The translations under genes were made by a program, and so were the position numbers. Positions 1 through 58,594 of a stretch of 64,000 nt of DNA are shown here, piece after piece; position 1 is the stretch's first letter, and every line of letters begins with the position of its first letter. A model generated the notes under the pieces. That model saw nothing but the letters and a program-made list of their open reading frames with translations, did no database searches and was not told where the DNA came from. The stretch lies in IMG/VR virus record IMGVR_UViG_3300032562_000003, positions 1 through 64,000 of that record; one strand, given 5' to 3'.

Positions 1-354
1 TTGGAATCTAACATGTTCTTTATTAAGGAACACCTGAGCCTGCGCAAGAAACATTCTATTAACGGGGATTACCTGGCCATAGGTCAATTCAAGCTACAGT
101 TATTAGAAAATTTAGGTTTTGGTAAACTGGAAGCCAGGCATAGAAGCGACGGCTGGGAATTCGTAAAGAGATCCAATTTATGGTTAGATACTATACAGCC
201 CGTTATAAATTCTCGTGTGACTAACTCCAAACACACAAAAAGTATTATTAACTGGAATATGTCCATAGGAAACCTTTTAGAGATAGGGCCTGGCTCAAAT
301 GATAATTATGGTATGACAAATCTAATCGGGTTACTTCGCCGCAAAACTTTGTAG
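1..354 (+). CDS. C-terminal part of a gene begun upstream of the window; probable PP-loop ATPase-family paralogue
   Basis: FKLQLLENLGFGKLEARHRSDGWE resembles the C-terminal K..L...GF.....K..GFE motif of 430..1290 and 56840..57790. Confidence 0.45.
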   Translation: MESNMFFIKEHLSLRKKHSINGDYLAIGQFKLQLLENLGFGKLEARHRSDGWEFVKRSNLWLDTIQPVINSRVTNSKHTKSIINWNMSIGNLLEIGPGSNDNYGMTNLIGLLRRKTL

Positions 355-399
355 ACATACCGGTAATGATAAATAAGAATAGTAATGAAGGTCAGAAAT

Positions 400-504
400 A
401 TGTCGTTTATGCAAGCGTTGCGTGAAAAATTAACTGAAGTTAAGGAAGATATTATAGCAGACAAGAGCATCTCTGCTGTCTTTTCGGTTTTTAGCAGCCT
501 TTAG
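400..504 (+). pseudogene. Truncated paralogue of the small Cys-rich protein at 56609..56833
   Basis: GATAAATA late promoter at 368-375; MSFMQALREKLTEVKEDII resembles MTSFADKLKQRLTEVADQV, then runs into the antisense strand of the convergent gene before any CxxC motif. Confidence 0.55.
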
Positions 505-1290
505 GATATCAGTATATTTAAGCGTAACCGAATCGTAATGTTCTTTTAGTTTTTCGAATCCATTATATTTACGAGGTTGCGGTATAACGTCAAACCCGGC
601 CAATTGAAATAATAGACATTTATAGTGATATCCGTCTTTCTCTAATTGTTCATATTCAATTCCTTGCTGCCGACGTATAATCTCAAAAACCGGCATCAGA
701 TATTGGTCGTGCATCCAAAAATAAGGAACCATCGGTTGTTTGGAAATCTCAGAATATCTCTGCAACCCAAATTGTCCATAATTGATCGCTCCGAATTTTC
801 CGATAGATAAAACATAATTTCCGCTAGACACGACAGTACCTTCGGTAATCTTGCTTGCAATATACATGTGTGTGAGAATGTGTGGTGTGGTGCAGTTATA
901 AGTCTTAGCCCATTCTTGTAAATGATTTTCATGAAAATCAATAACATCGATGTCTAGGTAGTCGACCGAAAGCCCCTCACGTTCTGCTAATGCATTTAAC
1001 TCAACTAAATCATAATCATTCATATTGTCATTGTATCTAGCTGAAACGATTCTGAAAGGTACACCGCTGTGCTTCCAGGCTAAAATCATCGCTTGACTAT
1101 CTACACCGCCGCTGCACATCAAGGTATAAGGTGCAGGGTACTTACTAGATATACGTTCAATGGCCTCTTTAGATATTTCTAATGGTGTTTTGTCAGTAGT
1201 TGGAATAGCATTGTTGTAGTTAATATAAAACGGTAGCTTTGGGTCATGTGGTAGATAGTCTGGTCCAAACCCGTATTTTACCCAATCCAT
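430..1290 (-). CDS. PP-loop (adenine nucleotide alpha-hydrolase-like) ATPase, C-terminus probably truncated
   Basis: SGGVDS PP-loop motif; colinear similarity to 56840..57790 (YPAPY.LM.SGG.DSQ.M...W.HSGVPF; CT.PHI..HM); last ~15 aa diverge. Confidence 0.75.
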   Translation of the reverse strand: MDWVKYGFGPDYLPHDPKLPFYINYNNAIPTTDKTPLEISKEAIERISSKYPAPYTLMCSGGVDSQAMILAWKHSGVPFRIVSARYNDNMNDYDLVELNALAEREGLSVDYLDIDVIDFHENHLQEWAKTYNCTTPHILTHMYIASKITEGTVVSSGNYVLSIGKFGAINYGQFGLQRYSEISKQPMVPYFWMHDQYLMPVFEIIRRQQGIEYEQLEKDGYHYKCLLFQLAGFDVIPQPRKYNGFEKLKEHYDSVTLKYTDILKAAKNRKDSRDALVCYNIFLNFS

Positions 1291-1316
1291 AATGTATCCT
1301 AACTCTTTGATATTTA

Positions 1317-1324
1317 TATAAATA
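1317..1324 (+). promoter_or_regulatory. T4-type late promoter TATAAATA, overlapping a divergent copy on the minus strand
   Basis: Exact TATAAATA 5 nt before the ATG at 1330; TAAATA recurs before many late genes in the window. Confidence 0.75.
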
Positions 1325-1329
1325 CATAC

Positions 1330-2721
1330 ATGCGTATTACAGAATTAGTTGAAGCCATTAACCAAACCAGTGTATTGACTGACACTGCGTATACTTTGTT
1401 GCGTAAAGAGATTGATAAGTTCGTAAAAGAAAATCGCAACAGAATCTATCATGCTATAGGTGTAGAAAACATCATTGCTCGAATGGAATCAAATGATAAG
1501 AAAATTGCAGACATTCGTGAACAACAGCTACCGTGGCAAGAAGAAGAAAAACTAGTTGAACCTTTGCAAAATCAGACTATGGATTTGTGGGGCGACGTAG
1601 AGCGCGACTCCTACACTAGTGAACCTAACAAAGAAATTGTCGAAGATTTTAAACACACTTTGGAATTAGATTTACAGAATGTGGCTCGTGATTACATTGA
1701 GACTCAATTTGGTAAAATCATGACTAAAGATCCTTCTCAGAAGGACATCAATTGGGATACCCGAACCAAACAAAATCTATATTGGTTAGAACACATAATT
1801 GTTCAGTTGGATACTAAAGGGGCCAACGCTCGTACCGGAGAACCAAAGACAGGCGGAGGTTACTATCAAGCCTATCCTTCAAAAAACAAAATACAAAGCA
1901 GATATGGGCAAACCATCGATTGGTGGAATGATTTAGCTGTGCATGTTAATGTGTACACTAGCGAAAAGAAATTATGGGAAGTGCTGACCAATAGACTACA
2001 GCAACTAGAAACAGAAGATAGATATGGTGAAAGCAGTATCTCCAATCCAATCCCAAAGTTTTTAAAGGATATACTACATACTTATGTGCATGAAGTTGTT
2101 CACTTAGAACAGGATGCACGTTTAAGAATTAACAAACAACAGGCAGAACTTAGAGGGGAACCATACGGTGTCAATCGAACAGATCATACTATGTTGCCTA
2201 ACCCAGACCAGCCTCGCCCTAAGATAACGATTCTTGATCCGAATAGCACCAAAGGATCTGATGTTAAGAACGCAGATGCCAAATACAGAAAATATCGCGG
2301 TGGAAAACGCGGTAATCCGGTGCAAGATGTTGATAGATTTGAAAACAATCTAAATCGATGGTCAGCATATTTAGGATCAGTTAATGAGATTGAAGCGCAC
2401 GCCGCCCACGCCGCAAGTGAACTTTATATGGAAATGTTGTCAAATTTATCAACATGGAGAAGCTATAGCTATTCAGACATTGATCGACAGCGAGAGATAA
2501 ATCAGTTTGTAGACAATGAGATTGATAATATTCGATATGGGTATTTCCCTAAAAATTTTTATACGATGGCGTCTATAGAACAAACCGCCAAAGAAGCTAT
2601 GCAAAAACCAAACCCAACTAATCAAGAAAAGCGGTTTATTAAGGTATGGCAAACTTATGTTAAGAAGATCATCAAGCATCTGCAAAGCTACAAAAAACCA
2701 GTACCTAAAGAAGAATATTAA
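1330..2721 (+). CDS. Putative internal-head protein with zincin metalloprotease motif
   Basis: HEVVH (HExxH) plus downstream NEIEAHA; N-terminus MRITELVE; late promoter. Confidence 0.55.
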   Translation: MRITELVEAINQTSVLTDTAYTLLRKEIDKFVKENRNRIYHAIGVENIIARMESNDKKIADIREQQLPWQEEEKLVEPLQNQTMDLWGDVERDSYTSEPNKEIVEDFKHTLELDLQNVARDYIETQFGKIMTKDPSQKDINWDTRTKQNLYWLEHIIVQLDTKGANARTGEPKTGGGYYQAYPSKNKIQSRYGQTIDWWNDLAVHVNVYTSEKKLWEVLTNRLQQLETEDRYGESSISNPIPKFLKDILHTYVHEVVHLEQDARLRINKQQAELRGEPYGVNRTDHTMLPNPDQPRPKITILDPNSTKGSDVKNADAKYRKYRGGKRGNPVQDVDRFENNLNRWSAYLGSVNEIEAHAAHAASELYMEMLSNLSTWRSYSYSDIDRQREINQFVDNEIDNIRYGYFPKNFYTMASIEQTAKEAMQKPNPTNQEKRFIKVWQTYVKKIIKHLQSYKKPVPKEEY

Positions 2722-2783
2722 GATTTTTAGTTGACTTATTTTCCTAAAAAGCTTATATTTAATTATAGGAAATGGAGAGCGAA

Positions 2784-3041
2784 ATGCCTGAGACGTATCA
2801 AGAACGAGTTGGACGTTACCGTATTATCCGTCACGAAGAACTTCCTGCTGCGCATAAGGCGGAGTACCGGCTCCGCGGTATCGACCCTGATAATAACTGG
2901 TCTTTGATTTGGTCTTTTGATGAGCCGGCGTCCGCTGAAAAGTGTCTCGAAGACTGCAACTTGACCAAGGCTTCGTTTCAAACCTACAAGCTGGTTGATG
3001 CTGGCCAGACAGAGTATATCGAACGTACTATGTGGTTTTAA
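2784..3041 (+). CDS. Small early hypothetical protein
   Basis: ORF behind promoter/RBS module 1. Confidence 0.75.
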   Translation: MPETYQERVGRYRIIRHEELPAAHKAEYRLRGIDPDNNWSLIWSFDEPASAEKCLEDCNLTKASFQTYKLVDAGQTEYIERTMWF

Positions 3042-3101
3042 AAACCAGTTGACTTCTTTTCAGTAAAAGACTATATTTAATTATAGGAAATGGAGATCAA
3101 G

Positions 3102-3269
3102 ATGGCGCGTAAAACCTATAAGACCTATTTTGTAAGTAAGGAAAACAACTGGGGCACTCCTCGCTGGGTCGTTTGGAAGGAAAATTGTTCGCCCTTCGGC
3201 CGATATCCTACTAAAACGGCTGCTATCAAGGACTGTCGTACATATGGCATTAAGCTTGAAGAACGCTAA
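3102..3269 (+). CDS. Small early hypothetical protein (55 aa, not in ORF track)
   Basis: MARKTYKTYFVSKENNWG...; GGAGA RBS, module 2. Confidence 0.7.
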   Translation: MARKTYKTYFVSKENNWGTPRWVVWKENCSPFGRYPTKTAAIKDCRTYGIKLEER

Positions 3270-3328
3270 ACCCCGTTGACTTATTTTCAGCAAAAGACTA
3301 TATTTAATTATAGGAAATGGAGATAGAG

Positions 3329-3541
3329 ATGTCTAAGGACACTGAACAGTATCGCGACCGTATGGAATTCCCTATGGAAGCCCTTGCCATAGAGCTTTTT
3401 GGATTTGCCGATCTCTCATGCGGAACCATGTCTGACCCTGAAATTGTAGAGCATGCGACCCGTAAGAGTAAGATGCTGAAGGAAATGATTCTGGCTACGG
3501 GCTTCTCTGAGGAAATGCTCAAGGCTTGCATGATAAACTAG
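3329..3541 (+). CDS. Small early hypothetical protein
   Basis: ORF behind module 3. Confidence 0.7.
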   Translation: MSKDTEQYRDRMEFPMEALAIELFGFADLSCGTMSDPEIVEHATRKSKMLKEMILATGFSEEMLKACMIN

Positions 3542-3598
3542 TTGACTTATGGTTCCTATATCTCTACGTTATAGATATAGAAATTGGGACCGATCCAT

Positions 3599-3901
3599 AT
3601 GCTACCGCCTATATCTGACGAACAAATGATGTGGTATATTCTTAAGGGGTATACTATTGATTTGGGCGCATACGGCGATCGGCATTGGTATCTTAACGGG
3701 CAACGTCACCGAGAAGACGGCCCTGCTATTGAATATGCGAACGGCGATCGGCATTGGTATCTTAACGGACAACGTCATCGAGAAGATGGTCCTGCGTGTG
3801 AATATGCGAACGGAGCTCGGTATTGGTATCTAAACGACCAAAACATGACCGAAGAAGAACACCGAAAACTCACACAAAAGAAAATGGCTAATATCGGTTG
3901 A
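3599..3901 (+). CDS. 22-aa repeat (MORN-variant-like, WYLNGQRHREDGPA) protein, paralogue 1 (2 units)
   Basis: 66-bp tandem repeats; termini near-identical to 14173 and 35731 copies. Confidence 0.85.
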   Translation: MLPPISDEQMMWYILKGYTIDLGAYGDRHWYLNGQRHREDGPAIEYANGDRHWYLNGQRHREDGPACEYANGARYWYLNDQNMTEEEHRKLTQKKMANIG

Positions 3902-3958
3902 CATCACGTCTCTGATTTGCTAATATGAATCATAGAGATTCAGCAAACGGAACAAACC

Positions 3959-4126
3959 ATGAATAGTTTTGTTTTTCGGGCCTTTGGTAACTCTAAGGTC
4001 TTTAATGCGAATACGCACAACGAAGCGATGTTGATGGCTAATCGTCATTTTCCGCTTGGTTCTGGGGTTTGGCAGAAGATTTCGGATTCCCAATGGAATT
4101 GGGTCGAAGGTAATTTTTTCGATTAA
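3959..4126 (+). CDS. Small early hypothetical protein (55 aa, not in ORF track)
   Basis: MNSFVFRAFG...; follows TTGACA promoter at 3898. Confidence 0.6.
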   Translation: MNSFVFRAFGNSKVFNANTHNEAMLMANRHFPLGSGVWQKISDSQWNWVEGNFFD

Positions 4127-4237
4127 TTAGTTGACTTCGGGTATCTGATTGCTACTTTTATTAAGACACTTATTCGATAATTAACCGTTAGGTAGTTGAC
4201 ATTGGTCATCTATCGATATAATATAAAAATATAATTT

Positions 4238-4324
4238 GGACGTATTAGTATAGTGGTCGAATACACCTGGCTCTTAATCCGGACGCTTAGCGCATCGTAG
4301 GTTCGAATCCTACTACGTCCTCCA
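4238..4324 (+). tRNA. Atypical tRNA, anticodon CTT (Lys) with long variable arm
   Basis: Acceptor GGACGTA/TACGTCC, T-arm GTAGG-TTCGAAT-CCTAC, loop CTCTTAA, variable hairpin CGC-TTA-GCG, encoded CCA. Confidence 0.75.
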
Positions 4325-4333
4325 TTAAATTAT

Positions 4334-4409
4334 AGCAGTGTAGCATAGTAGCCAATGCAACAGATTCATATTCTGTCTATCGTGGGTGCGAGTCCCATCA
4401 CTGCTTCCA
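4334..4409 (+). tRNA. tRNA-CAT (elongator Met or Ile2)
   Basis: AGCAGTG/CACTGCT acceptor, ACAGA-TTCATAT-TCTGT anticodon arm, T-loop TGCGAGT, CCA. Confidence 0.85.
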
Positions 4410-4460
4410 CTTTTGCCCAATTCAATTGACACCTGAATTGTATTAGAATAAATTGAATAT

Positions 4461-5255
4461 TCAATGGCTCATGGGTCTGCTAGGTGTGGTCGAAGTAACA
4501 CACCTAGGAAGACGAATATCTTTGCTCATTATTCGTTCAATATTTCCTACCGCTGCTAAGCGTAAGTCGTCATCTTCTCGAATGTATCTCTCTCCTTTAA
4601 TTTCTACCCAGTGATCGTAGTCCTTTAGATAGAAATCCGGATAATATTTCCTTGTTTTGCCTGCAGAATCGGTGAATGAGAAATAAGTAGTGGTGTTTTT
4701 GATCCACTGTATTTGGTGTTTATCGAGTAAAAGCGCAAATTGATACTCTGCTCCAGAATCCATCTTGTGCCCGCGGTAAATGCATGTTTTCTTTCGTGTA
4801 GAATTGGGATGATATTTGTTCTTATTGCTACATGCAACGGAACAGTATTTCCTAGTCGATTCACATGGCGTCACCGAAAAAATAGTGCCACATTCTTTAC
4901 AGACCAGTTTGGATCTTATGCGGGTGCTTCGGATAGGTTTGGATTTTTTAGGTTTGGCTCTAGCAACGTTGTTAAATTTAGCAGCACATGATTGATCGCA
5001 GTATGTACCTCCTCTTCTAACATACGGCAGTGGATTATTACACTGTTTGCAATGTTTAGGATTATGTAGGTAAGAACTCGTTGCAATTTCTCGATCTTTG
5101 TTAGCTCTTATTCGAATTCCTTTGCTGATATTTTCACCATTATTAGAACATGCGGCTGCATATGTAGGATCGTGCCAATGTAAATGGGAACGCAGTCCGC
5201 GTTCCGAGTGAAAATATTTGTCGCACGCGGTGCAGGTAAAGGTATTATTTGACAT
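4461..5255 (-). mobile_element. Free-standing putative homing endonuclease (C2H2/Cys zinc motifs + PD-(D/E)xK domain) within the tRNA region
   Basis: CTACDKYF..L.SHLHWH, several CxxC, DSGAE...YYPDFYL...VEIKG. Confidence 0.75.
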
Positions 5256-5432
5256 CAGTGATCTCCAGATAAGTATGTTTGTGGGACAGCCCGGACTCCA
5301 GACTGGGTTTCAAAGAACTACAACTTCTTTGATTACCACAGTGTATTTATTCCTTTTAGCAGTTACCCAAAAAACTTTACAATCACCTAGTAATTTAGTA
5401 TAAAGAACAAGTAATTTACAGAGGAATAGAAA

Positions 5433-5999
5433 ATGAAGGTATCACTGCGTAAGGCAAATGCACTGCAAGTTGCTATCAATGAAGCAATCAAGGGGCTAAA
5501 CTTCAACTACACGGTTGGGCTGAATGAGTTCCAGGACACGATTGCTGCAATCGCAGCGGCTGCTACTACTTTTAGTACTAGCGTCGGTCGTCGTACGGCT
5601 CTGCTTGATGCCCTCTACGAGATTCGCAAGTCAGTTGATGCTGTTAATAACAGCTACGATATCAATAGCACGCTTGCAAATATCGCTCGCCTAGAAAAGG
5701 ACATTCAGTTCTACGGTTCTTATGCTAAGGCTGAGGTTCGTGCTGAACAAGCTGTCATCGACGGTAAGCTAGCTAAGATCCGCACTCGTGCAGAAGATGC
5801 ATTCGGTTATAGACGAGCCGGCGAAGTCCAAACGTCTGTACTCACTACCGAAGACGTAAAAAATTACCGCAGCATTGTTGCTGAATGCAAGAAGCAAAAG
5901 CAAAAGCTGCAAGATGAACTTCTCGAATCCAACGTTCGCAACGTCATTCATCTGACAGATAAGACTGTTGCGGTTCTGCAGGCCGAGAACATCATCTAA
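5433..5999 (+). CDS. Coiled-coil hypothetical protein
   Basis: 188-aa helical ORF with GAGGA RBS. Confidence 0.8.
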   Translation: MKVSLRKANALQVAINEAIKGLNFNYTVGLNEFQDTIAAIAAAATTFSTSVGRRTALLDALYEIRKSVDAVNNSYDINSTLANIARLEKDIQFYGSYAKAEVRAEQAVIDGKLAKIRTRAEDAFGYRRAGEVQTSVLTTEDVKNYRSIVAECKKQKQKLQDELLESNVRNVIHLTDKTVAVLQAENII

Positions 6000-6000
6000 C

Positions 6001-6275
6001 GGTTTGGTGGTATGCCTTGTAGCGCGAACTGCAGGGCAAAACCACCCGAAAAGAAAGAGAGATTAGAGTAGACACCGTAAGTTTCATTAGAAATTTACAT
6101 TTGACAGCTCCGTTTTTGGCATCATAATTACGTGACCCGAACTATTAAAGACATTTTGCACTTTGCTGTTCGAACATATGTAGTTTTTGTAGATTGTGAA
6201 GTGTCTATTGCACACAAGGGTGGCTCTTAAGAGCCCCGCTGTTTTTTGCACAGTCTATGACTTACTCTTTCTTTT
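6001..6275 (+). ncRNA. Candidate structured RNA downstream of the coiled-coil gene
   Basis: GGTGG.GCCTTGTAG/CTGCAGGGC.CCACC hairpin; AAAGAG..TAGAC pairs with GTCTA..CTCTTT; repeated TTGCAC/TTGT. Confidence 0.4.
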
Positions 6276-6515
6276 CGTATTTTTTAAAATAACTGAAAAA
6301 AGTTATTGACTTTGGTCTAGCATATAAGTATACTAACAAAATCGAGAGAGCGCAGAGAAACAAATGTTTCAACAGGTTCTCAATAAAAAATTTAAAAACT
6401 ATAAAAAGGTGTTGACATTCGTTAGCGTCTTTGATATAATGAAATATAAGCTGAGAAATCAGCGATCTTTGACAATTTAGAATAAGAATTGGGGGCATAG
6501 CCCCGATAATGAGAT

Positions 6516-6897
6516 AGCCTTGAGCAATTGAGGTTAAAGCAAGGTTTCCTATAAACTTGCGCCACCAATGGTCTCTCTATGCAAGCACGAACTAATCCGA
6601 AAGGATCCGTCCCTAGAAAGGCGGTAGTCGATAAGTTAGGTGTGTTGTCCGAAAGGATGTGTCACAGAGCCAGTCGGTGAGTGATAAGAGGGTTGGCGCC
6701 CTCATGACATGCAGCCAAACTAACGAACGATGAAAGTTAACGTGTAGTTATTGAGTCTGACCCTGCAAGGAAAGGCAAGATAGCATTTCGAGCGAAGAAG
6801 GTTTCATAAGGAGCCGGACCCGCAAAGAAACATTGAGTATCCCGCAAGGGATTCGGTAATGACCAAAGACGTTCGTTTAAAGCTGTAATCTCAGGCT
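6516..6897 (+). ncRNA. Large ornate ncRNA, GOLLD-like candidate (compact)
   Basis: No ORF; terminal helix AGCCTTGAG/CTCAGGCT; AACGAACG(6722)/CGTTCGTT(6870); many GNRA hairpins (TCC-GAAA-GGA x2, TCCC-GCAA-GGGA); upstream TTGACA..TATAAT promoter; next to tRNAs. Confidence 0.65.
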
Positions 6898-6920
6898 GTA
6901 CAAAAGATAAATAATATTAG

Positions 6921-7016
6921 ACTATTTTGATGAACACACTTACGAAAAAACTAAAAACGGTGATCATTGATCGGCCGGTGACGTTGAGATTAAGAAAGTG
7001 TGTTCTTCTAAATAGT
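6921..7016 (+). ncRNA. Long-stem small RNA candidate after a late promoter
   Basis: ACTATTT..GAACACACTT / AAGTGTGTTC..AAATAGT; GATAAATA at 6906. Confidence 0.4.
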
Positions 7017-7023
7017 TTAATGT

Positions 7024-7103
7024 CGCGGGGTAGAGAAGTCCGGTCGTTCTCGCCAGTCTCATAAACTGGAAATCGGTGGTTCAAATCCAGCCTCCCGCAT
7101 CCA
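7024..7103 (+). tRNA. Initiator-like tRNA-fMet(CAT)
   Basis: CGCGGGG 5' end with C1:A72 mismatch; anticodon arm CCAGT-CTCATAA-ACTGG; CCA. Confidence 0.8.
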
Positions 7104-7220
7104 TTCAGTTTCTTGTTTCTGTAAAAAACAATTGGTGGAGCCCGGTACTGCTGTATCGGTCCTATTAGGATAGAGGGTTGTAAGTGACCTGTACTTGACT
7201 GGGAACTTTCGAAGATTTAT

Positions 7221-7295
7221 GCGGGTGTGGTATAGGAGATGTGCCCTAGCCTTCCAAGCTAGAGAGGACCGGAGCGTTGCCGGCCACCCGCTCCA
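7221..7295 (+). tRNA. tRNA-Gly(TCC)
   Basis: GCGGGTG/CACCCGC, CTAGC-CTTCCAA-GCTAG, U73, CCA; non-canonical T-loop AGCGTTG. Confidence 0.88.
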
Positions 7296-7299
7296 ATAT

Positions 7300-7374
7300 G
7301 CTTCCATAGTATAATGGTCATTACAATGCGTTGCCAACGCGTGGAAATCGGTTCGATCCCGATTGGAAGCTCCA
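7300..7374 (+). tRNA. tRNA-Gly(GCC)
   Basis: GCTTCCA/TGGAAGC, ATGCG-TTGCCAA-CGCGT, TTCGATC T-loop, CCA. Confidence 0.92.
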
Positions 7375-7391
7375 CTTTTCATAAATACTAG

Positions 7392-7880
7392 ATGTTATTA
7401 ATCGCTTATCAGGGAATCTTTAACGGTCAAAATTATGATCAAGCCAACACACCAAACCAAATCGGTTTGGCGTTTAACCATGGATATTCGGTATCAGTGG
7501 ATGTTTGGAGAGTTAACGGTATTTTGTATTTAGGTACGGACCAACCGCTCACAGAAGTTACACCTGATTATCTGAAGGGTAATCGTTTTTGGATCAATGC
7601 TAGAAACGTCGAAATGCAAGAATGGATTTCTACACAGCCGATCAAATCATATCCTAATTATTTTTGGTATGACATAACCCATCCTCCACCGTACGTTACC
7701 ACTAGCGGCGGTCAACTGTGGACCTTCGGAACAGTACCCGTAAATAACTCTAGTATCGTCGTTCTTCCTGAAATAAATGACAGAGGGCTGTTGAGTACAG
7801 TCAAGCTAAATTGCTATGGAATCTGTAGCACATATCCTACGTTTATTAGACGTATGCGCACTGAAGGTAATTGGTACTAA
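7392..7880 (+). CDS. Degenerate glycerophosphodiester phosphodiesterase-like protein
   Basis: MLLIAYQG (usually HRG)...GYSVSVDVW...LYLG.D...GICS; catalytic His residues appear substituted. Confidence 0.5.
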   Translation: MLLIAYQGIFNGQNYDQANTPNQIGLAFNHGYSVSVDVWRVNGILYLGTDQPLTEVTPDYLKGNRFWINARNVEMQEWISTQPIKSYPNYFWYDITHPPPYVTTSGGQLWTFGTVPVNNSSIVVLPEINDRGLLSTVKLNCYGICSTYPTFIRRMRTEGNWY

Positions 7881-8326
7881 TAATAGTACACGCAATATGC
7901 GTTGTTACCAGTCTCGCTTGGGTTAAAATCGCTGGTTAACTTAAACCCAGACTTAGCATAGGTCTTCCAACTAACATCTCTGGGATAACTCCAACATAGT
8001 ACTGCCTTTTCTGATCTACCCTGTGCAATCGTAGCATTCAGCAGTACAACACCTATTCCCTTTCCCCGAAACTTTTCAAATACATATAATCCTCTAGAAC
8101 GATATTCTTTGTCATTGCACATGTGACCGCTGTTGACTCCTGCAATTTCTCCGTCTATCATGTAAGCGAAGAATGTTGCAGGTGTTTCCATATTTGAACC
8201 TAAATATCCGCCGGTTCTGCACATTGCACTGTTAGTTTCGATTGTCGAAATCCTATCGGGCCACAGATAGTTTCGCCAGATTGGTAAAATTTCATCGAAC
8301 GATATGGTTATAAGTTTGTCAGTCAT
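7877..8326 (-). CDS. GNAT acetyltransferase, paralogue of 57800
   Basis: RSRGLYV...FRGKGIG motif A; ILPIW...LWPDR, VNSGH shared with 57800; TATAAATA upstream. Confidence 0.8.
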   Translation of the reverse strand: MTDKLITISFDEILPIWRNYLWPDRISTIETNSAMCRTGGYLGSNMETPATFFAYMIDGEIAGVNSGHMCNDKEYRSRGLYVFEKFRGKGIGVVLLNATIAQGRSEKAVLCWSYPRDVSWKTYAKSGFKLTSDFNPSETGNNAYCVYYY

Positions 8327-8386
8327 TCTAATATTTATAGAACCAAACTGCTTGAATATTAATTTCAATTGTCATATAATTGCAAT

Positions 8387-54722: not shown

Positions 54723-56606
54723 ATGAATTATCTAATCGACTTTGCTACCACGTTATCTGATGCTGATATCAACGCATATTTAGCCGCTAATAACATGACC
54801 TCAGTAAAGGCATACACGACTTTCAAGAATGTACATCTTGTTTCCTCAGAGGTAGAACCTAAGGTCGATTCCTCAGTACTAAAAGTAAATTCTGATGATG
54901 GCAATGATATCAAACTTCTAGATTTTGATATCACAGTGACTCAACCAAAGAGCGAAGAATTAGATATACAGGTACATGACGATAAGGATTGGTGGAAGGT
55001 AGTTTCTCTTAATGACGTTGATCTTTCCAAGCCAACTTACACACAGGAACGTCGTGGTTTTGGTAGCGTCGTATATATTATGGACAGCGGAATCGAAGCT
55101 ACTCATCCTGATTTTACGAACGCTAAAGTTACTTTGTTACATAGTTTTACTACTGACTTTACTGATACAAAGGGACACGGCACTGCTTTGGCTAGTTTAG
55201 TTGCAGGTGATACTTGTGGGCTGACTAGAGCTGAAATTAAGGTAGTTAAGGTATTCGATATTAACACTGCCACTAAACAAAGTGATCTATTATCAGCACT
55301 AGATGCGATTGCAGTAGATTATAATAGCAATGGTCTTCCTCCATCAGTTCTTAACTTAAGTTGGTCTATTGCCAGAAACATATATGTAGACTCTAAAATT
55401 CAAGAGCTAATCGATTTAGGTATTTTTGTGGTAGCTGCTGCTGGTAATAGTGGAACTACAATCGGTGACGTTACCCCTGCTGCTATTCCTGATGTATTGA
55501 CTATTGGTTCATTTGGTCACTCACTAACCCCTAGTGATTTTTCTGATTACACAGGCAGCGCTATTTCGGTAACGGGTTCTACTACAAACTCTGGCGCGCT
55601 AGACGGCTGGGCACCTGGAGAGAAGATTTGGGCTGCTGGATTAAAAGGTACATATGCATTTATTGCAGGTACTTCAGCTTCTTCTGCAATTGCTTCAGGA
55701 GCTATTGCTCATAATTTAAGTGTATATGTAGATAGTAACGGAAATACACCTAGTGTTTACACAAATCATAGTGCCAGAAAAGATTACTTTGCAGGGGTAT
55801 TGTCAACTTCAAATATTACTATGGACGATAATACGATGTACAGAATGATGTGTTTAGGTAAGAAAGATGTGCTGAATCTTTCTGACCCTAAATATGCTCT
55901 TTCTGAGAATTTAATCGCATCATACCTACAATCAGTTGCTATAGTGTCTCCTACAATCAGAATAATTTCAGAATCAGGTAAGCCGTACTATTCAGATGTA
56001 CTAGTCAATGCACCTATCACTAGAATCACTGGACCAGATTTACCTAGTTACGTCACAATCGATGAAACCGGACTAATGACTATTACCTCTCCGACAATAA
56101 CCGATCCATATGAACAACTTCCTTCTTTGAGCTTAACAACGTACTCAGCCTCTGGTGCAACTCAAAATATTAGTGTTATGTTGTTTGTATTCAGAGATGG
56201 GGTAACGTTAGGCAATATCTCTACACTAGTTCCTACGACAGATCCTGTAGTAAATGCAGTATTACTAGCCAATACCTGTTTGACTAACGGATATTGCGGC
56301 GTTGACGACTGTTATCTTGAAGGACCTTTTGCGTGTCTGGGCAGCGGGAAATTTGGTTGCTATTGTCAATATGGTAGTGACGAGAGAGTTAAGGACAATA
56401 TCCTCTTAGAGGACACTATAGATGGACTGAATATCTATTCATACAACTATATTTGGGATAAGCATCGTAGGCTTTCTGGTGTAATGGCACAAGAGCTGAT
56501 CGGTACAGTTCACGAAAAGGCTGTGGTCAATACAGAATCCGGTTACTTCAAGGTCGATTATAATCGGTTACCTTCTAACGTAAAGTTCAGAATTTTCGGT
56601 AAGTAA
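54723..56606 (+). CDS. Subtilisin (S8) protease fused to a Cys-rich segment and a C-terminal S74 intramolecular chaperone
   Basis: MDSG, HGT, AAGN, GTS; 6-Cys segment 56277-56375; SDERVKDNI...GVMAQEL...KVDY; late promoter. Confidence 0.85.
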   Translation: MNYLIDFATTLSDADINAYLAANNMTSVKAYTTFKNVHLVSSEVEPKVDSSVLKVNSDDGNDIKLLDFDITVTQPKSEELDIQVHDDKDWWKVVSLNDVDLSKPTYTQERRGFGSVVYIMDSGIEATHPDFTNAKVTLLHSFTTDFTDTKGHGTALASLVAGDTCGLTRAEIKVVKVFDINTATKQSDLLSALDAIAVDYNSNGLPPSVLNLSWSIARNIYVDSKIQELIDLGIFVVAAAGNSGTTIGDVTPAAIPDVLTIGSFGHSLTPSDFSDYTGSAISVTGSTTNSGALDGWAPGEKIWAAGLKGTYAFIAGTSASSAIASGAIAHNLSVYVDSNGNTPSVYTNHSARKDYFAGVLSTSNITMDDNTMYRMMCLGKKDVLNLSDPKYALSENLIASYLQSVAIVSPTIRIISESGKPYYSDVLVNAPITRITGPDLPSYVTIDETGLMTITSPTITDPYEQLPSLSLTTYSASGATQNISVMLFVFRDGVTLGNISTLVPTTDPVVNAVLLANTCLTNGYCGVDDCYLEGPFACLGSGKFGCYCQYGSDERVKDNILLEDTIDGLNIYSYNYIWDKHRRLSGVMAQELIGTVHEKAVVNTESGYFKVDYNRLPSNVKFRIFGK

Positions 56607-56608
56607 CA

Positions 56609-56833
56609 ATGACTTCGTTTGCTGATAAACTTAAGCAACGATTGACTGAGGTAGCAGACCAAGTAAGTTCGGCCATCGAAGTTGTAACATCAATCGAAGC
56701 CGAGCAGCGACTAGACATATGTAAAGGGTGCCCGGAGCTTACTCATCTTACTCACCAATGTAAGTTATGCGGCTGCTTTATGTTAGCAAAAACTAAATTA
56801 AAATCAGCTTCCTGTCCGATTAATAAATGGTAG
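56609..56833 (+). CDS. Small Cys-rich metal-binding protein
   Basis: RL.ICKGC...CKLCGC...K......CP..KW. Confidence 0.8.
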   Translation: MTSFADKLKQRLTEVADQVSSAIEVVTSIEAEQRLDICKGCPELTHLTHQCKLCGCFMLAKTKLKSASCPINKW

Positions 56834-56839
56834 GATTCA

Positions 56840-57790
56840 GTGCACCAATGGACTAGGATGGGTTGGGGAAGCGAATTCTCTGATGTTTTTCATGAAGAAA
56901 AGCAGTTACACATAGACCTATCTAATCTTACCCCAACGTACAATAAAATAACTGAAATCGCTAAGAGAGTCATACGCGATATTTCTAACCAGTACCCTGC
57001 ACCATATAATCTTATGGTAAGCGGTGGTTCCGACAGTCAGACTATGCTTTGGTGTTGGATGCATTCTGGTGTTCCTTTTAATTGTATCTCTATAGAATAT
57101 GTAGACAATACTGGAAAGGTTTACAACGAACATGATCTTGAACAGTTAAAAGAATTTGCAAATAAATTCAACATACCTATAACTTACAAACAGCTTAATA
57201 TCTTTGACTTTCTAGAGAACCATCTTTACGATTATGCTGCCAAATATCGTTGCACAAGTCCTCATATATGCTCTCATATGAAAATAGCCGAAATGGTATC
57301 TGGTACAAATATATTCAGCGGAAACTTTATTCAAGAAGGATGCTATACCTATACTGTTTTGGGTCTTAAGAGATACGCTGACGTAAACACTAATGTAATT
57401 CCGTTCTTCCTTCTACACGACGCAGAGTTAGCTGCCGCTATGGCTCAGTTTATGTATGATCCTCTAGAGGACCAAACTAAAGGCTTAGAGTGGCATATAG
57501 AAATGCTTCATAAGTATAATAATAAAATATCAATACTTCATAAAGCAGGTATACCCGTTATTCCACAGAAAACCAAATTTACCGGATTTGAGTTAATCAA
57601 AGACTATTATGACGAACATAATACGTTAACACCTATAGAACGCATTCGATATGGTAATATGCCTAGTAAAAGAGCATTTGATATACTATTTCGATATAAA
57701 TTATCAGAACAAGTTAAATATAATGATATGGTAGTGTATTTGTACAAAGACGAACTCTACTCAAACCAGAAATTAACTGTAGGCACGTAG
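56840..57790 (+). CDS. PP-loop ATPase
   Basis: SGGSDS; paralogue of 430..1290. Confidence 0.8.
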   Translation: MHQWTRMGWGSEFSDVFHEEKQLHIDLSNLTPTYNKITEIAKRVIRDISNQYPAPYNLMVSGGSDSQTMLWCWMHSGVPFNCISIEYVDNTGKVYNEHDLEQLKEFANKFNIPITYKQLNIFDFLENHLYDYAAKYRCTSPHICSHMKIAEMVSGTNIFSGNFIQEGCYTYTVLGLKRYADVNTNVIPFFLLHDAELAAAMAQFMYDPLEDQTKGLEWHIEMLHKYNNKISILHKAGIPVIPQKTKFTGFELIKDYYDEHNTLTPIERIRYGNMPSKRAFDILFRYKLSEQVKYNDMVVYLYKDELYSNQKLTVGT

Positions 57791-57799
57791 GATACTCAT

Positions 57800-58369
57800 A
57801 TGCTAGATGTTCAGGTTATAACTTTCACTCAGATTCTTCCTATTTGGAAAAATGAACTATGGCCCGACAGAATGTCAGAAATTGAAACACATAGTGCTAT
57901 GACTTGGCCTAAGCCAAAAGCTGAACCATACGACATGGGTATATTCAGTAATCCAGTTTATTTTTGGGGAATTTACGATGGGGGAGATTTAATTGCCGTT
58001 AACAGCGGACATTTATCTAGTCCACTAGAGTTTAGGAGCCGCGGTCTTTGGGTTCATCCTAATTATAGAAGTTTAGGTTTATCTCAGCAGCTTTTATTAG
58101 CAGCAAAACAAACTGCGATATCTTCTACCACAGATGGTGTGATGCCAGTTTTACTCCAACTACTAAAAATTTTCAAGATATTTATCTGGATACTTAAGTG
58201 CGAGTGTAATAAAATTCTTAAGGTCAGGACTTTCTATGTTAAGAGGAAGATATTCCTTTTTTACAATATGTACAGATGGAATACCTTCAATTTTTTTGCG
58301 AAAATATTCTTCTACCACAGATGGTGTGATGCCAGTTTTACTGACACTTATATATTCTGTACGATCTAG
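57800..58369 (+). pseudogene. GNAT acetyltransferase, C-terminally truncated near 58120
   Basis: RSRGLWV.P.YRSLG; the WS.PR..Y...GF end seen in the 7877 paralogue is missing and replaced by antisense read-through. Confidence 0.65.
58121..58342 (+). repeat. 35-bp exact direct duplication (58121-58155, 58308-58342)
   Basis: TCTTCTACCACAGATGGTGTGATGCCAGTTTTACT occurs twice. Confidence 0.95.
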
Positions 58370-58594
58370 TCCATTAAATCTAGACCTATGGGGTTTTAGG
58401 TAGGTTTTCCCGTCTTCCTCTAAGGTTCTGATCTGCCCCTCAAAACCTGGCTGAGCAATAGCTAAAAAATGTATTACTGCTGTATTTCCGATTTTAGTAT
58501 ATGCATTGGTGCGACTGTATAAATCTGTTGTAATTCCAGGTTTGGTATAGGTGTCAACCCCTTTTATTTCTGCGATATACAGAACTAATGTCAT
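58163..58594 (-). CDS. GIY-YIG/T5orf172-like nuclease-fold protein
   Basis: LYIA......YTKPGIT.....R...Y; TEY. Confidence 0.5.
   Translation of the reverse strand: MTLVLYIAEIKGVDTYTKPGITTDLYSRTNAYTKIGNTAVIHFLAIAQPGFEGQIRTLEEDGKTYLKPHRSRFNGLDRTEYISVSKTGITPSVVEEYFRKKIEGIPSVHIVKKEYLPLNIESPDLKNFITLALKYPDKYLENF

What the first reader, a model, noticed from the sequence alone, without database searches (positions are those of the whole stretch)
1..1290. Relic second and third copies of the same module fused by a deletion
Seen: 430..1290 is a colinear paralogue of the 56840 PP-loop protein. 400..504 starts like the 56609 Cys protein but loses its Cys domain where the PP-loop C-terminus also diverges (~478), consistent with one deletion joining two convergent genes. 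1..354 carries the PP-loop family C-terminal motif, and an intact GNAT paralogue lies at 7877..8326. Inference: the linkage recurs independently, supporting a functional, expanded module.
Basis: partly seen in the sequence, partly recalled or inferred. Interest (0 to 1): 0.6.

Follow-up and report, generated by a model that had tools for sequence, protein, structure and literature searches.

The report
Recent deletion in duplicated phage module
A large freshwater phage carries a second copy of a conserved three-gene set (small cysteine-rich protein, subtilisin-like protease, PP-loop ATPase), and in this genome a 1,970-base deletion between two 9-base repeats has removed the protease and cut the two flanking genes; this is an ordinary kind of gene loss, but both versions coexist in lake samples.

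Summary
Window 430..1290(-) is a paralogue of the PP-loop gene at 56840 (37% identity, E 2e-56). Window 400..474 matches the first 25 codons of a DUF6171 gene exactly. Window 1..354 is the 3' third of a third, divergent PP-loop gene.

Near-identical contigs show the intact layout: PP-loop3 > DUF6171 > S8 peptidase < PP-loop2. The window lacks 1,970 bp of it. The intact form has GCATCTCTG at both edges, and the window keeps one copy at 467..475. The loss covers 42 codons of DUF6171, the whole 569-aa S8 gene and the last 30 codons of PP-loop2, including a family-conserved S-R-YD-LFRY block.

This is not a mis-assembly. In four lake or freshwater metagenome runs the junction stands at depth 20-88, and the intact branch coexists at depth 5-11. 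A separate 314-kb contig has the same junction.

- This is one second locus with an internal deletion, not two module copies fused.
- 1..354 is an intact gene cut by the record end.
- The deletion is recent, with only 3 substitutions in 274 codons.

The DUF6171 / PP-loop / S8 linkage recurs in distant phage contigs, so the module is real. Its function is unknown. The mechanism is ordinary, so interest is modest.

The parts
1..354 (+). Last 117 codons plus stop of a third, divergent PP-loop gene (PP-loop3). The gene is cut by the start of the record and is not broken.
   Evidence: 94% identical to residues 174-290 of the L003 290-aa gene. That gene matches the PP-loop family profile at probability 95.7%, E 9e-9. 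It is full length in L024, which carries the same deletion. The window is C1:1-64000.
355..399 (.). Intergenic spacer, 19 nt shorter than in L003
   Evidence: One 19-nt gap after window 362 in the alignment to L003
400..504 (+). Stub of a DUF6171 gene: 25 native codons (400..474), then 9 foreign codons and a stop, read from the antisense of the PP-loop gene. The Cys domain is lost.
   Evidence: identical N-terminus MSFMQALREKLTEVKEDIIADKSIS; profile E 0.0025, positions 1-26 of 68
467..475 (.). Deletion junction: a single copy of GCATCTCTG, which stands at both edges of the 1,970-bp segment in the intact allele
   Evidence: Junction-bearing contigs in 4 runs and in L024.
430..1290 (-). PP-loop2 gene, truncated at the C-terminus: 275 native codons (1290..466), then 11 foreign codons and a stop. 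It lacks the last 30 codons, which hold the conserved S-R-YD-LFRY block.
1330..2721 (+). Conserved 463-aa neighbour of unknown function. It forms the right flank of the locus in all close relatives.
   Evidence: 455 identical residues to the L003 461-aa gene. No family hit.
7877..8326 (-). Full-length GNAT acetyltransferase, paralogue of the GNAT next to the first module
54723..56606 (+). The only S8 (subtilisin-like) peptidase gene left in the record. It is a paralogue of the deleted one and has a C-terminal Peptidase_S74 chaperone domain.
   Evidence: (49% identity over 354 aa, E 4e-90)
56609..56833 (+). Intact DUF6171 gene of the first module
   Evidence: (32.9 bits, cut-off 27)
56840..57790 (+). 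Intact PP-loop gene of the first module
57800..58120 (+). GNAT gene of the first module. Homology covers only residues 7-98 of 149, and the rest of the open frame is unrelated sequence.

Best explanation
The window begins inside a second, paralogous copy of a conserved phage gene set. Its intact order, in window orientation, is PP-loop3 (+), DUF6171 (+), S8 peptidase (+), PP-loop2 (-).

In this genome a 1,970-bp deletion has occurred between two 9-bp direct repeats (GCATCTCTG), one inside the DUF6171 gene and one inside the convergent PP-loop2 gene. The deletion removed 42 codons of DUF6171 (its whole Cys domain), the entire S8 peptidase gene and the last 30 codons of PP-loop2.

What is shown: the two stubs now overlap tail to tail at 430..504. 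The deletion is the derived state. It is recent. In the four metagenome runs examined it is the majority allele, with the intact allele persisting as a minority.

What is inferred: the mechanism is replication slippage or other recombinase-independent illegitimate recombination at short direct repeats. The truncated PP-loop2 and the DUF6171 stub are probably non-functional. The loss is tolerated because the genome keeps an intact S8 / DUF6171 / PP-loop set at 54.7-57.8 kb.
For: Breakpoints: window 467..2874 = L003 2402..1 (99.3% identity) and window 1..475 = L003 4857..4364. The 9-mer stands at both edges in L003 and once in the window.

Polarity: the extra DNA completes three conserved reading frames.
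- The PP-loop C-terminus is shared by all 19 relatives in A1, and its S, R, D and R positions are kept in at least 90% of the 63 sequences in A2.
- The DUF6171 Cys domain is restored.
- The S8 gene is 49% identical to the copy at 54723.

Not a frameshift: no minus-strand frame holds the missing tail.

Not an artefact: junction contigs stand at depth 41, 88, 20 and 65 in runs X1, X2, X3 and X6 (four studies). An alternative branch with the intact sequence stands at depth 8.1, 5, 6.5 and 10.9. In X6 that branch is 2,021 nt (30+1,961+30) and rejoins at 467..496. The same junction occurs in a 314-kb contig from another sample, and the intact form in a 2.4-kb contig.

Recent: 2 synonymous and 1 non-synonymous substitution in 274 codons against L003 (the fourth 'difference' there is the junction codon).

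Other points: the deleted DNA is not elsewhere in the 259-kb record. The record holds only one S8 gene and one intact DUF6171 gene.
Against: The runs laid are Logan contigs, not raw reads. Depths are therefore contig means, and all four runs are flagged as possible sources of this DNA, so the allele shares (about 5-24% intact) are rough.

Loss of function of the truncated PP-loop2 is inferred from conservation alone. With only 3 substitutions there is no signal of relaxed selection either way.

The record is 73% complete, so a further S8 or DUF6171 copy in the missing part cannot be excluded.

A 9-bp repeat would also be compatible with a site-specific event, although no recombinase gene lies in or next to the segment.
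Confidence: 0.93

Rival explanations
1. Mis-assembly: the junction at 467..475 is a chimeric join made near the end of the contig.
For: The junction lies only 475 bp from the record end. The assembly graph does branch there.
Against: A 9-bp repeat is too short to mislead a 31-mer graph. Contigs carrying the junction stand at depth 20-88 in four runs from four studies. An independently assembled 314-kb contig from another sample is 100% identical over window 1..1892.
Confidence: 0.01
2. The window form is ancestral, and relatives such as L003 gained a 1,970-bp insertion carrying the S8 gene.
For: Presence or absence alone does not give direction.
Against: The extra DNA supplies the family-conserved C-terminus of PP-loop2 and the Cys domain of DUF6171, both in frame. 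The more distant L005 (65% protein identity) has the same intact layout. The window's tails after the junction are antisense read-through with no relatives.
Confidence: 0.01
3. Programmed or site-specific excision: the 9-bp repeats are recombination sites, and the S8 cassette is switched out reversibly, which would explain why both forms coexist.
For: Both alleles coexist in every run examined. The repeats are exact.
Against: No recombinase, integrase or transposase gene lies in the segment or in the neighbouring genes. The repeats lie inside coding sequence, and excision destroys two further genes. A nearby 1,093-bp difference between L024 and L003 has only 3 bp of microhomology, which looks like sporadic illegitimate recombination.
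Confidence: 0.03
4. The truncated genes are still functional: a shortened PP-loop2 and a 34-aa peptide from the DUF6171 start have a use, so the deletion is remodelling and not loss.
For: Both stubs keep open frames with their native starts. The allele is the majority in four runs. One divergent family member, PP-loop3, also lacks the S-R-YD-LFRY block.
Against: The lost residues are nearly invariant in the family. They fall in a confidently modelled helix and strand of the fold (pLDDT 96-97 over residues 271-300). The stub has lost all six invariant Cys.
Confidence: 0.1

Closest known systems
Deletions between short direct repeats in phage genomes (classical cases in T4 rII and T7; cited from my own knowledge, not looked up here)
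   Same: Exact short repeat at both edges with one copy left at the junction. No recombinase is involved. A non-essential or redundant region is lost.
   Different: Here the event is seen as a natural polymorphism in lake metagenomes. It strikes one of two paralogous gene sets and fuses two convergent genes tail to tail.
PP-loop ATP pyrophosphatases (AsnB synthetase domain 1ct9, TtuA 5b4e, NcsA 6scy, LarE 8cp4, beta-lactam synthetase 1jgt)
   Same: SGGxDS motif. The confident model (pLDDT 92) matches these structures at Foldseek E 4e-6 to 1e-4.
   Different: Identity is 8-15% and TM-scores only 0.3-0.45. No Pfam or NCBIfam model reaches its cut-off. A profile search finds no relative among solved structures. 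The family is almost entirely viral and unnamed. The C-terminal S-R-YD-LFRY block is specific to this family.
DUF6171 (PF19668; PHROG 13558)
   Same: The copy at 56609 passes the Pfam cut-off (32.9 bits against 27) and matches phrog_13558 at E 2e-18.
   Different: No function is known, and no paper in the library mentions it. The copy at 400..504 keeps only the N-terminal 25 residues.
Peptide-maturation gene sets with an S8 protease (PatA/PatG cyanobactin proteases, QhpE)
   Same: An S8 protease is linked to a small Cys-rich protein and to modifying enzymes. Weak hits to PatA/PatG and QhpE models.
   Different: All hits are far below the curated cut-offs (35 bits against 421 and 165). Nothing shows that DUF6171 is a substrate. 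This is a lead only.

Membership tests
Deletion between short direct repeats (illegitimate recombination or slippage) | The same short sequence at both edges in the intact allele, and one copy at the junction | tested here: met
   GCATCTCTG at both edges in L003, 1,970 bp apart; a single copy at window 467..475
Deletion between short direct repeats (illegitimate recombination or slippage) | The short form is derived | tested here: met
   The extra DNA completes three conserved genes. L005, a more distant relative, has the intact layout.
Deletion between short direct repeats (illegitimate recombination or slippage) | The junction is real in the DNA of natural samples | tested here: met
   Junction contigs in 4 runs and in L024. 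These are contigs only; no raw reads were available.
Deletion between short direct repeats (illegitimate recombination or slippage) | No dedicated recombinase or mobile-element features | tested here: met
   The segment holds only the S8 gene and two gene ends. The neighbours have no integrase or transposase hits.
PP-loop ATP pyrophosphatase superfamily | SGGxDS PP-loop motif near the N-terminus of the nucleotide-binding domain | tested here: met
   SGGVDSQ (430..1290 product), SGGSDSQ (56840 product), SGGLDSE (PP-loop3). G, G, D and S are invariant in 63 sequences.
PP-loop ATP pyrophosphatase superfamily | Alpha/beta fold like that of AsnB, TtuA and LarE | tested here: met
   Foldseek E 4e-6 to 1e-4 with probability 1.00, but TM-scores only 0.3-0.45
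PP-loop ATP pyrophosphatase superfamily | ATP is cleaved to AMP and PPi with adenylation of a substrate | not testable with these tools
   Needs an enzyme assay
QueC (PF06508), ATP_bind_3/TilS (PF01171) as specific families | Score over the curated cut-off | tested here: not met
   14-19 bits against cut-offs of 22 and 27. TilS_N scores 20 bits against 93.6.
DUF6171 (PF19668) | Cys-rich core C-x2-C...C-x2-C-G-C...C-P...W, with score over the cut-off | tested here: met
   For 56609..56833: 32.9 bits against 27, with six invariant Cys
DUF6171 (PF19668) | The same core in the 400..504 product | tested here: not met
   Only profile positions 1-26 are present and no Cys is left. It is a remnant of a member, not a member.
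Peptidase_S8 | Pfam score over the cut-off, and Asp/His/Ser motifs | tested here: met
   59.9 bits (window copy) and 85.3 bits (deleted copy in L003) against 21.8. DSG, GHGT and GTS motifs are visible in both sequences.
GNAT acetyltransferase | Full Acetyltransf_1 domain | tested here: met
   For 7877..8326: 38.4 bits against 20.7, profile positions 28-116 of 116. The copy at 57800 reaches only profile position 90 and matches only residues 7-98 of its paralogue.

The most novel reading that the evidence does not exclude
The DUF6171 / PP-loop / S8 peptidase set (with a GNAT in some phages) may be an undescribed, virus-specific enzymatic pathway of large freshwater phages. In it, an ATP-dependent adenylating enzyme would work with, or on, a small six-Cys protein, with a protease as the third partner.

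This population would then show the set being reduced from two copies to one by reciprocal losses. The second locus has lost its S8 gene, its DUF6171 gene and one PP-loop gene. The first locus has a shortened GNAT. Exactly one full-length copy of each component remains.
Probability: 0.3. Interest if true: 0.55.

Novelty: new member of a known kind. Interest (0 to 1): 0.3.

Why it matters
The event itself is routine: a deletion between short repeats. It has three modest points of value.

- **Cleanly documented gene loss in the wild.** Exact breakpoints, polarity and both alleles are seen side by side in lake metagenomes, which could be followed over time.
- **Annotation.** Window 385/400..504, and residues 276-286 of the 430..1290 product, are deletion artefacts and not genes in their own right. 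Window 1..354 is a normal gene cut by the record end.
- **A pointer to an unstudied module.** The comparison shows that DUF6171, a virus-specific PP-loop family and an S8 peptidase stay linked across distant phage contigs despite changes in gene order. No member has been studied. The deletion shows that a second copy is dispensable in nature.

Tried and rejected
**Frameshift or sequencing error at the PP-loop C-terminus.** Rejected: none of the three minus-strand frames over 300..600 holds the missing tail.

**Direct BLASTP of 1..354 against the PP-loop protein.** No similarity. The relation appeared only through the full-length orthologue and a profile.

**Isolated phages.** No DNA match for window 1..6000 and no tblastn match for the PP-loop protein.

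**Solved structures by sequence profile.** None.

**Curated libraries.** PHROGs, NCBIfam and PADLOC name nothing for the PP-loop proteins. The S8 hits are below cut-off.

**Papers.** No paper mentions DUF6171. Nothing relevant turned up for PP-loop, subtilisin and jumbo phage.

**Complex prediction of the PP-loop protein with DUF6171.** No verdict (score 0.00). This is not evidence either way.

**Scans of viral contigs for the deletion junction and for the intact left edge.** No matches. Uninformative, since near records may be left out.

**Further module parts.**
- The two 287-aa genes in L007 are not PP-loop relatives.
- The genes beyond window base 1 in L024 (351, 67, 132 and 127 aa) are not module parts; one is a cREC_REC domain protein.
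- The small gene upstream of the PP-loop gene in L006 is not DUF6171-like.

**A tRNA-modification role suggested by nearby tRNA genes.** tRNA genes lie near the set in 3 of 7 loci only, and none lie near the first module. It remains an untested lead.

**Other notes.** The large representative protein search was not used. No other genetic code was used.

Full report
**Setting.** The window is bases 1-64000 of a 258,859-bp linear IMG/VR virus record, estimated 73% complete. It carries five tRNA genes between 4238 and 7374. Nothing similar is held among isolated phages. Twenty lake-water or freshwater metagenome runs from 17 studies hold window 1..3000 almost word for word. This is an uncultured large freshwater phage. 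The window starts at the record's first base, so 'inspect upstream sequence' could only be done on other contigs.

**Check of the observation.** The product of 430..1290(-), 286 aa, aligns colinearly with the product of 56840..57790(+), 316 aa. Identity is 37% over 263 residues, E 2e-56, and the alignment stops at residue 253. The GNAT at 7877..8368(-) (ATG at 8326) matches the GNAT at 57800 with E 4e-22 and passes Pfam Acetyltransf_1. The 56609 protein is a DUF6171 member (32.9 bits against a cut-off of 27; phrog_13558 at E 2e-18).

Taken directly, the two weaker claims are marginal or negative. The 385..504 product against the 56609 protein gives 13/31 identities, E 9e-4. The 1..354 product against the PP-loop protein gives nothing. 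Both claims are nevertheless correct, as the relatives show.

**What the relatives show.** A word search with the 286-aa protein found 95 relatives, all unnamed. The closest, P0001, is 98% identical but 305 aa long. In the alignment, P0001 and all other relatives carry a C-terminal block (consensus PS-R-YDILFRY-L). The window's protein follows P0001 up to ...KDSRDA and then reads LVCYNIFLNFS-stop. No other minus-strand frame holds the missing tail, so this is not a frameshift.

P0001 is encoded on two contigs, L003 (7.3 kb) and L004 (6.9 kb). A 65%-identical protein, P0002, is encoded on L005. In all three, the PP-loop gene is followed by a convergent Peptidase_S8 gene of 569-577 aa and then a gene of 290-328 aa. 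A 67-aa DUF6171 gene is called between them in L003 and L005.

BLASTN places window 467..2874 on L003 2402..1 (99.3% identity) and window 1..475 on L003 4857..4364. The two alignments overlap by nine bases. L003 reads GACAAGA-GCATCTCTG-ATACC at one edge and AAGTGAC-GCATCTCTG-CTGTC at the other. The window reads GACAAGA-GCATCTCTG-CTGTC. The window therefore lacks 1,970 bp (1,961 bp plus one repeat copy).

**What was lost.**
- The last 30 codons and the stop of PP-loop2.
- The whole S8 gene, which is 49% identical over 354 residues to the S8 gene at 54723 (E 4e-90).
- The last 42 codons of DUF6171, which hold all six Cys that are invariant in eight family members.

The first 25 residues of the L003 DUF6171 protein match the product of window 400..474 exactly. 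A DUF6171 profile finds 400..477 at E 0.0025. The missing DNA is not elsewhere in the record.

**The frame at 1..354.** It is 94% identical to the last 117 residues of the 290-aa gene of L003. So it is a third, divergent PP-loop paralogue.

It is not a relic. A scan of metagenome contigs with a 32-mer common to both alleles returned L024, part of a 314,240-bp contig. L024 is 100% identical to window 1..1892, has the same deletion junction and runs 3.5 kb beyond window base 1. In L024 the gene is full length. In the laid contigs too, the sequence runs 612-1,003 nt to the left of window base 1.

**Is the junction real?** Logan contigs of four runs from four studies were laid on window 1..3000. 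In X1, X2 and X3, one contig covers 446..3000 across the junction, at depth 41, 88 and 20. In X6, a 51-nt contig covers 446..496 at depth 65.5.

In all four runs a second contig shares 446..475. In X1-X3 it then continues with ATACCAGGATTGCAATTTG..., which is the intact sequence of L003, at depth 8.1, 5 and 6.5. In X6 the second contig (depth 10.9) is 2,021 nt long, that is 30 + 1,961 + 30, and rejoins the window at 467..496. Both alleles therefore coexist, with the deletion as the majority and the intact form at very roughly 5-24%.

These are contig mean depths, and the runs may include the record's own source, so the shares are rough. A chimeric join is excluded as far as contigs can show. 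L025, a 2.4-kb contig, carries the intact form and is 100% identical to L003.

**Polarity, age and mechanism.** The long form completes three conserved frames, and the more distant L005 has it too, so the short form is derived. Against L003, the retained 274 codons of PP-loop2 show 2 synonymous changes and 1 non-synonymous change (D219N). The fourth difference listed, at codon 275, is the junction itself. The left flank shows 7 substitutions and one 19-nt intergenic indel. The deletion is therefore recent, and no further decay has followed.

An exact 9-bp repeat at the breakpoints, with one copy left, is the signature of slippage or illegitimate recombination at short direct repeats. A chance 9-bp match at a random pair of breakpoints has odds of about 4e-6. 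The mechanism itself is inferred. No recombinase gene is nearby.

**Consequences for the genes.** The two stubs overlap tail to tail at 430..504. PP-loop2 has lost positions that are kept in at least 90% of 63 family members (S276, R278, D281 and R285 in the numbering of the 56840 protein). These lie in a confidently modelled part of the fold (helix 279-291, block pLDDT 96-97). Loss of function is likely but inferred.

**Census of the record.**
- S8: one gene.
- DUF6171: one intact gene plus the stub.
- PP-loop: one intact, one truncated, one cut by the record end.
- GNAT: one full length at 7877..8326, and one at 57815..58102 that covers only residues 7-98 of 149.

As far as the record shows, one full-length copy of each component remains. 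This fits redundancy being resolved, though the record is incomplete.

**Is the module real?** In four distant relatives on long contigs, the PP-loop gene is directly followed by an S8 gene (L006-L009). In L007, L008 and L009 it is directly preceded by a DUF6171-like gene, 3 nt upstream or overlapping. In L006 the small upstream gene is unrelated. L007 also has a GNAT 3.4 kb downstream.

Gene order differs between the window's first module (S8 > DUF6171 > PP-loop > GNAT), the second locus (PP-loop3 > DUF6171 > S8 < PP-loop2) and the distant loci (DUF6171 > PP-loop > S8). Linkage kept through rearrangement is the real support for functional coupling. The two copies in this genome are old paralogues (37% identity). 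PP-loop2 has relatives at 54-65% identity in other contigs, and the copy at 56840 has relatives at up to 50%.

**What the module might do.** The PP-loop protein folds with high confidence (pLDDT 92.2, pTM 0.90). It resembles the AsnB synthetase domain, TtuA, NcsA, LarE and beta-lactam synthetase, at low TM-scores (0.3-0.45) and 8-15% identity. No Pfam or NCBIfam model reaches its cut-off, and no solved relative is found by sequence. Atlas look-alike clusters are 93-100% viral and unnamed.

My best guess is an ATP-dependent adenylating enzyme (amidation or sulfur insertion) that works with the six-Cys DUF6171 protein as a metal-binding partner or as a substrate, with the S8 protease in the same pathway. 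Confidence in this is low. The complex prediction gave no verdict. tRNA genes lie near the set in only 3 of 7 loci. No paper mentions DUF6171.

**Verdict.** But this is one locus and not two fused copies, an S8 gene was lost as well, 1..354 is an intact gene cut by the record end, and the event is recent. The kind of event is well known. The module it strikes is uncharacterised and is the more interesting lead.

Noticed in passing
window 57800..58594: The GNAT next to the first module is homologous to its paralogue only up to about 58102. A 35-nt exact direct repeat stands at 58121..58155 and 58308..58342. An antisense 143-aa ORF (58163..58594, no family hit) overlaps the rest of the GNAT frame. 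This looks like a replaced or disrupted GNAT 3' end. All near-identical contigs share this state.
   Followed up: partly
L024:2482-2766 against L003:5470-6562 (just left of window base 1): The genome with the 1,970-bp deletion also lacks 1,093 bp of L003, with 3-bp microhomology (CCC). That segment holds most of a Sulfotransfer_2 gene and the C-terminal part of a DUF6445 gene. There is also a ~105-bp indel next to tRNA-Lys(ttt). So the same locus shows a second gene loss.
   Followed up: partly
window 2723..2786, 3041..3104, 3268..3331: Three copies (78-100% identity) of a 64-nt element with GTTGACTT, TATATTTAAT and AGGAAATGGAGA before an ATG. It looks like a repeated promoter plus ribosome-binding cassette in front of three small genes that start MESEM, MEIKM and MEIEM.
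   Followed up: no
window 3584..3901: The ORF holds a 69-nt tandem repeat (3672..3809, 90% identity) that encodes a repeated GDRHWYLNGQRHREDGP motif.
   Followed up: no
window 54723..56606: The remaining S8 peptidase has a C-terminal Peptidase_S74 (endosialidase chaperone) domain at residues 552-593, after a Cys-rich stretch. Pfam finds no such domain in the deleted paralogue in L003.
   Followed up: partly
window 4238..7374 and L024:2907-3133: The second locus sits inside the phage's tRNA region: Lys(ctt), Met(cat) twice, Gly(tcc) and Gly(gcc) in the window, and Lys(ttt) and Ser(gct) just upstream of base 1. One of the two CAT tRNAs could be an Ile2-type tRNA. This was not examined.
   Followed up: no
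L024:3144-3527 (upstream of window base 1): A 127-aa gene with a cREC_REC (cyclic-phosphate processing receiver) domain, E 7e-20. The same family was also called in L005.
   Followed up: no
window 4461..5255: A 264-aa minus-strand ORF rich in Cys/His zinc-finger-like motifs lies directly after the tRNA-Lys/tRNA-Met pair. It may be a homing-endonuclease-like gene. It was not scanned.
   Followed up: no
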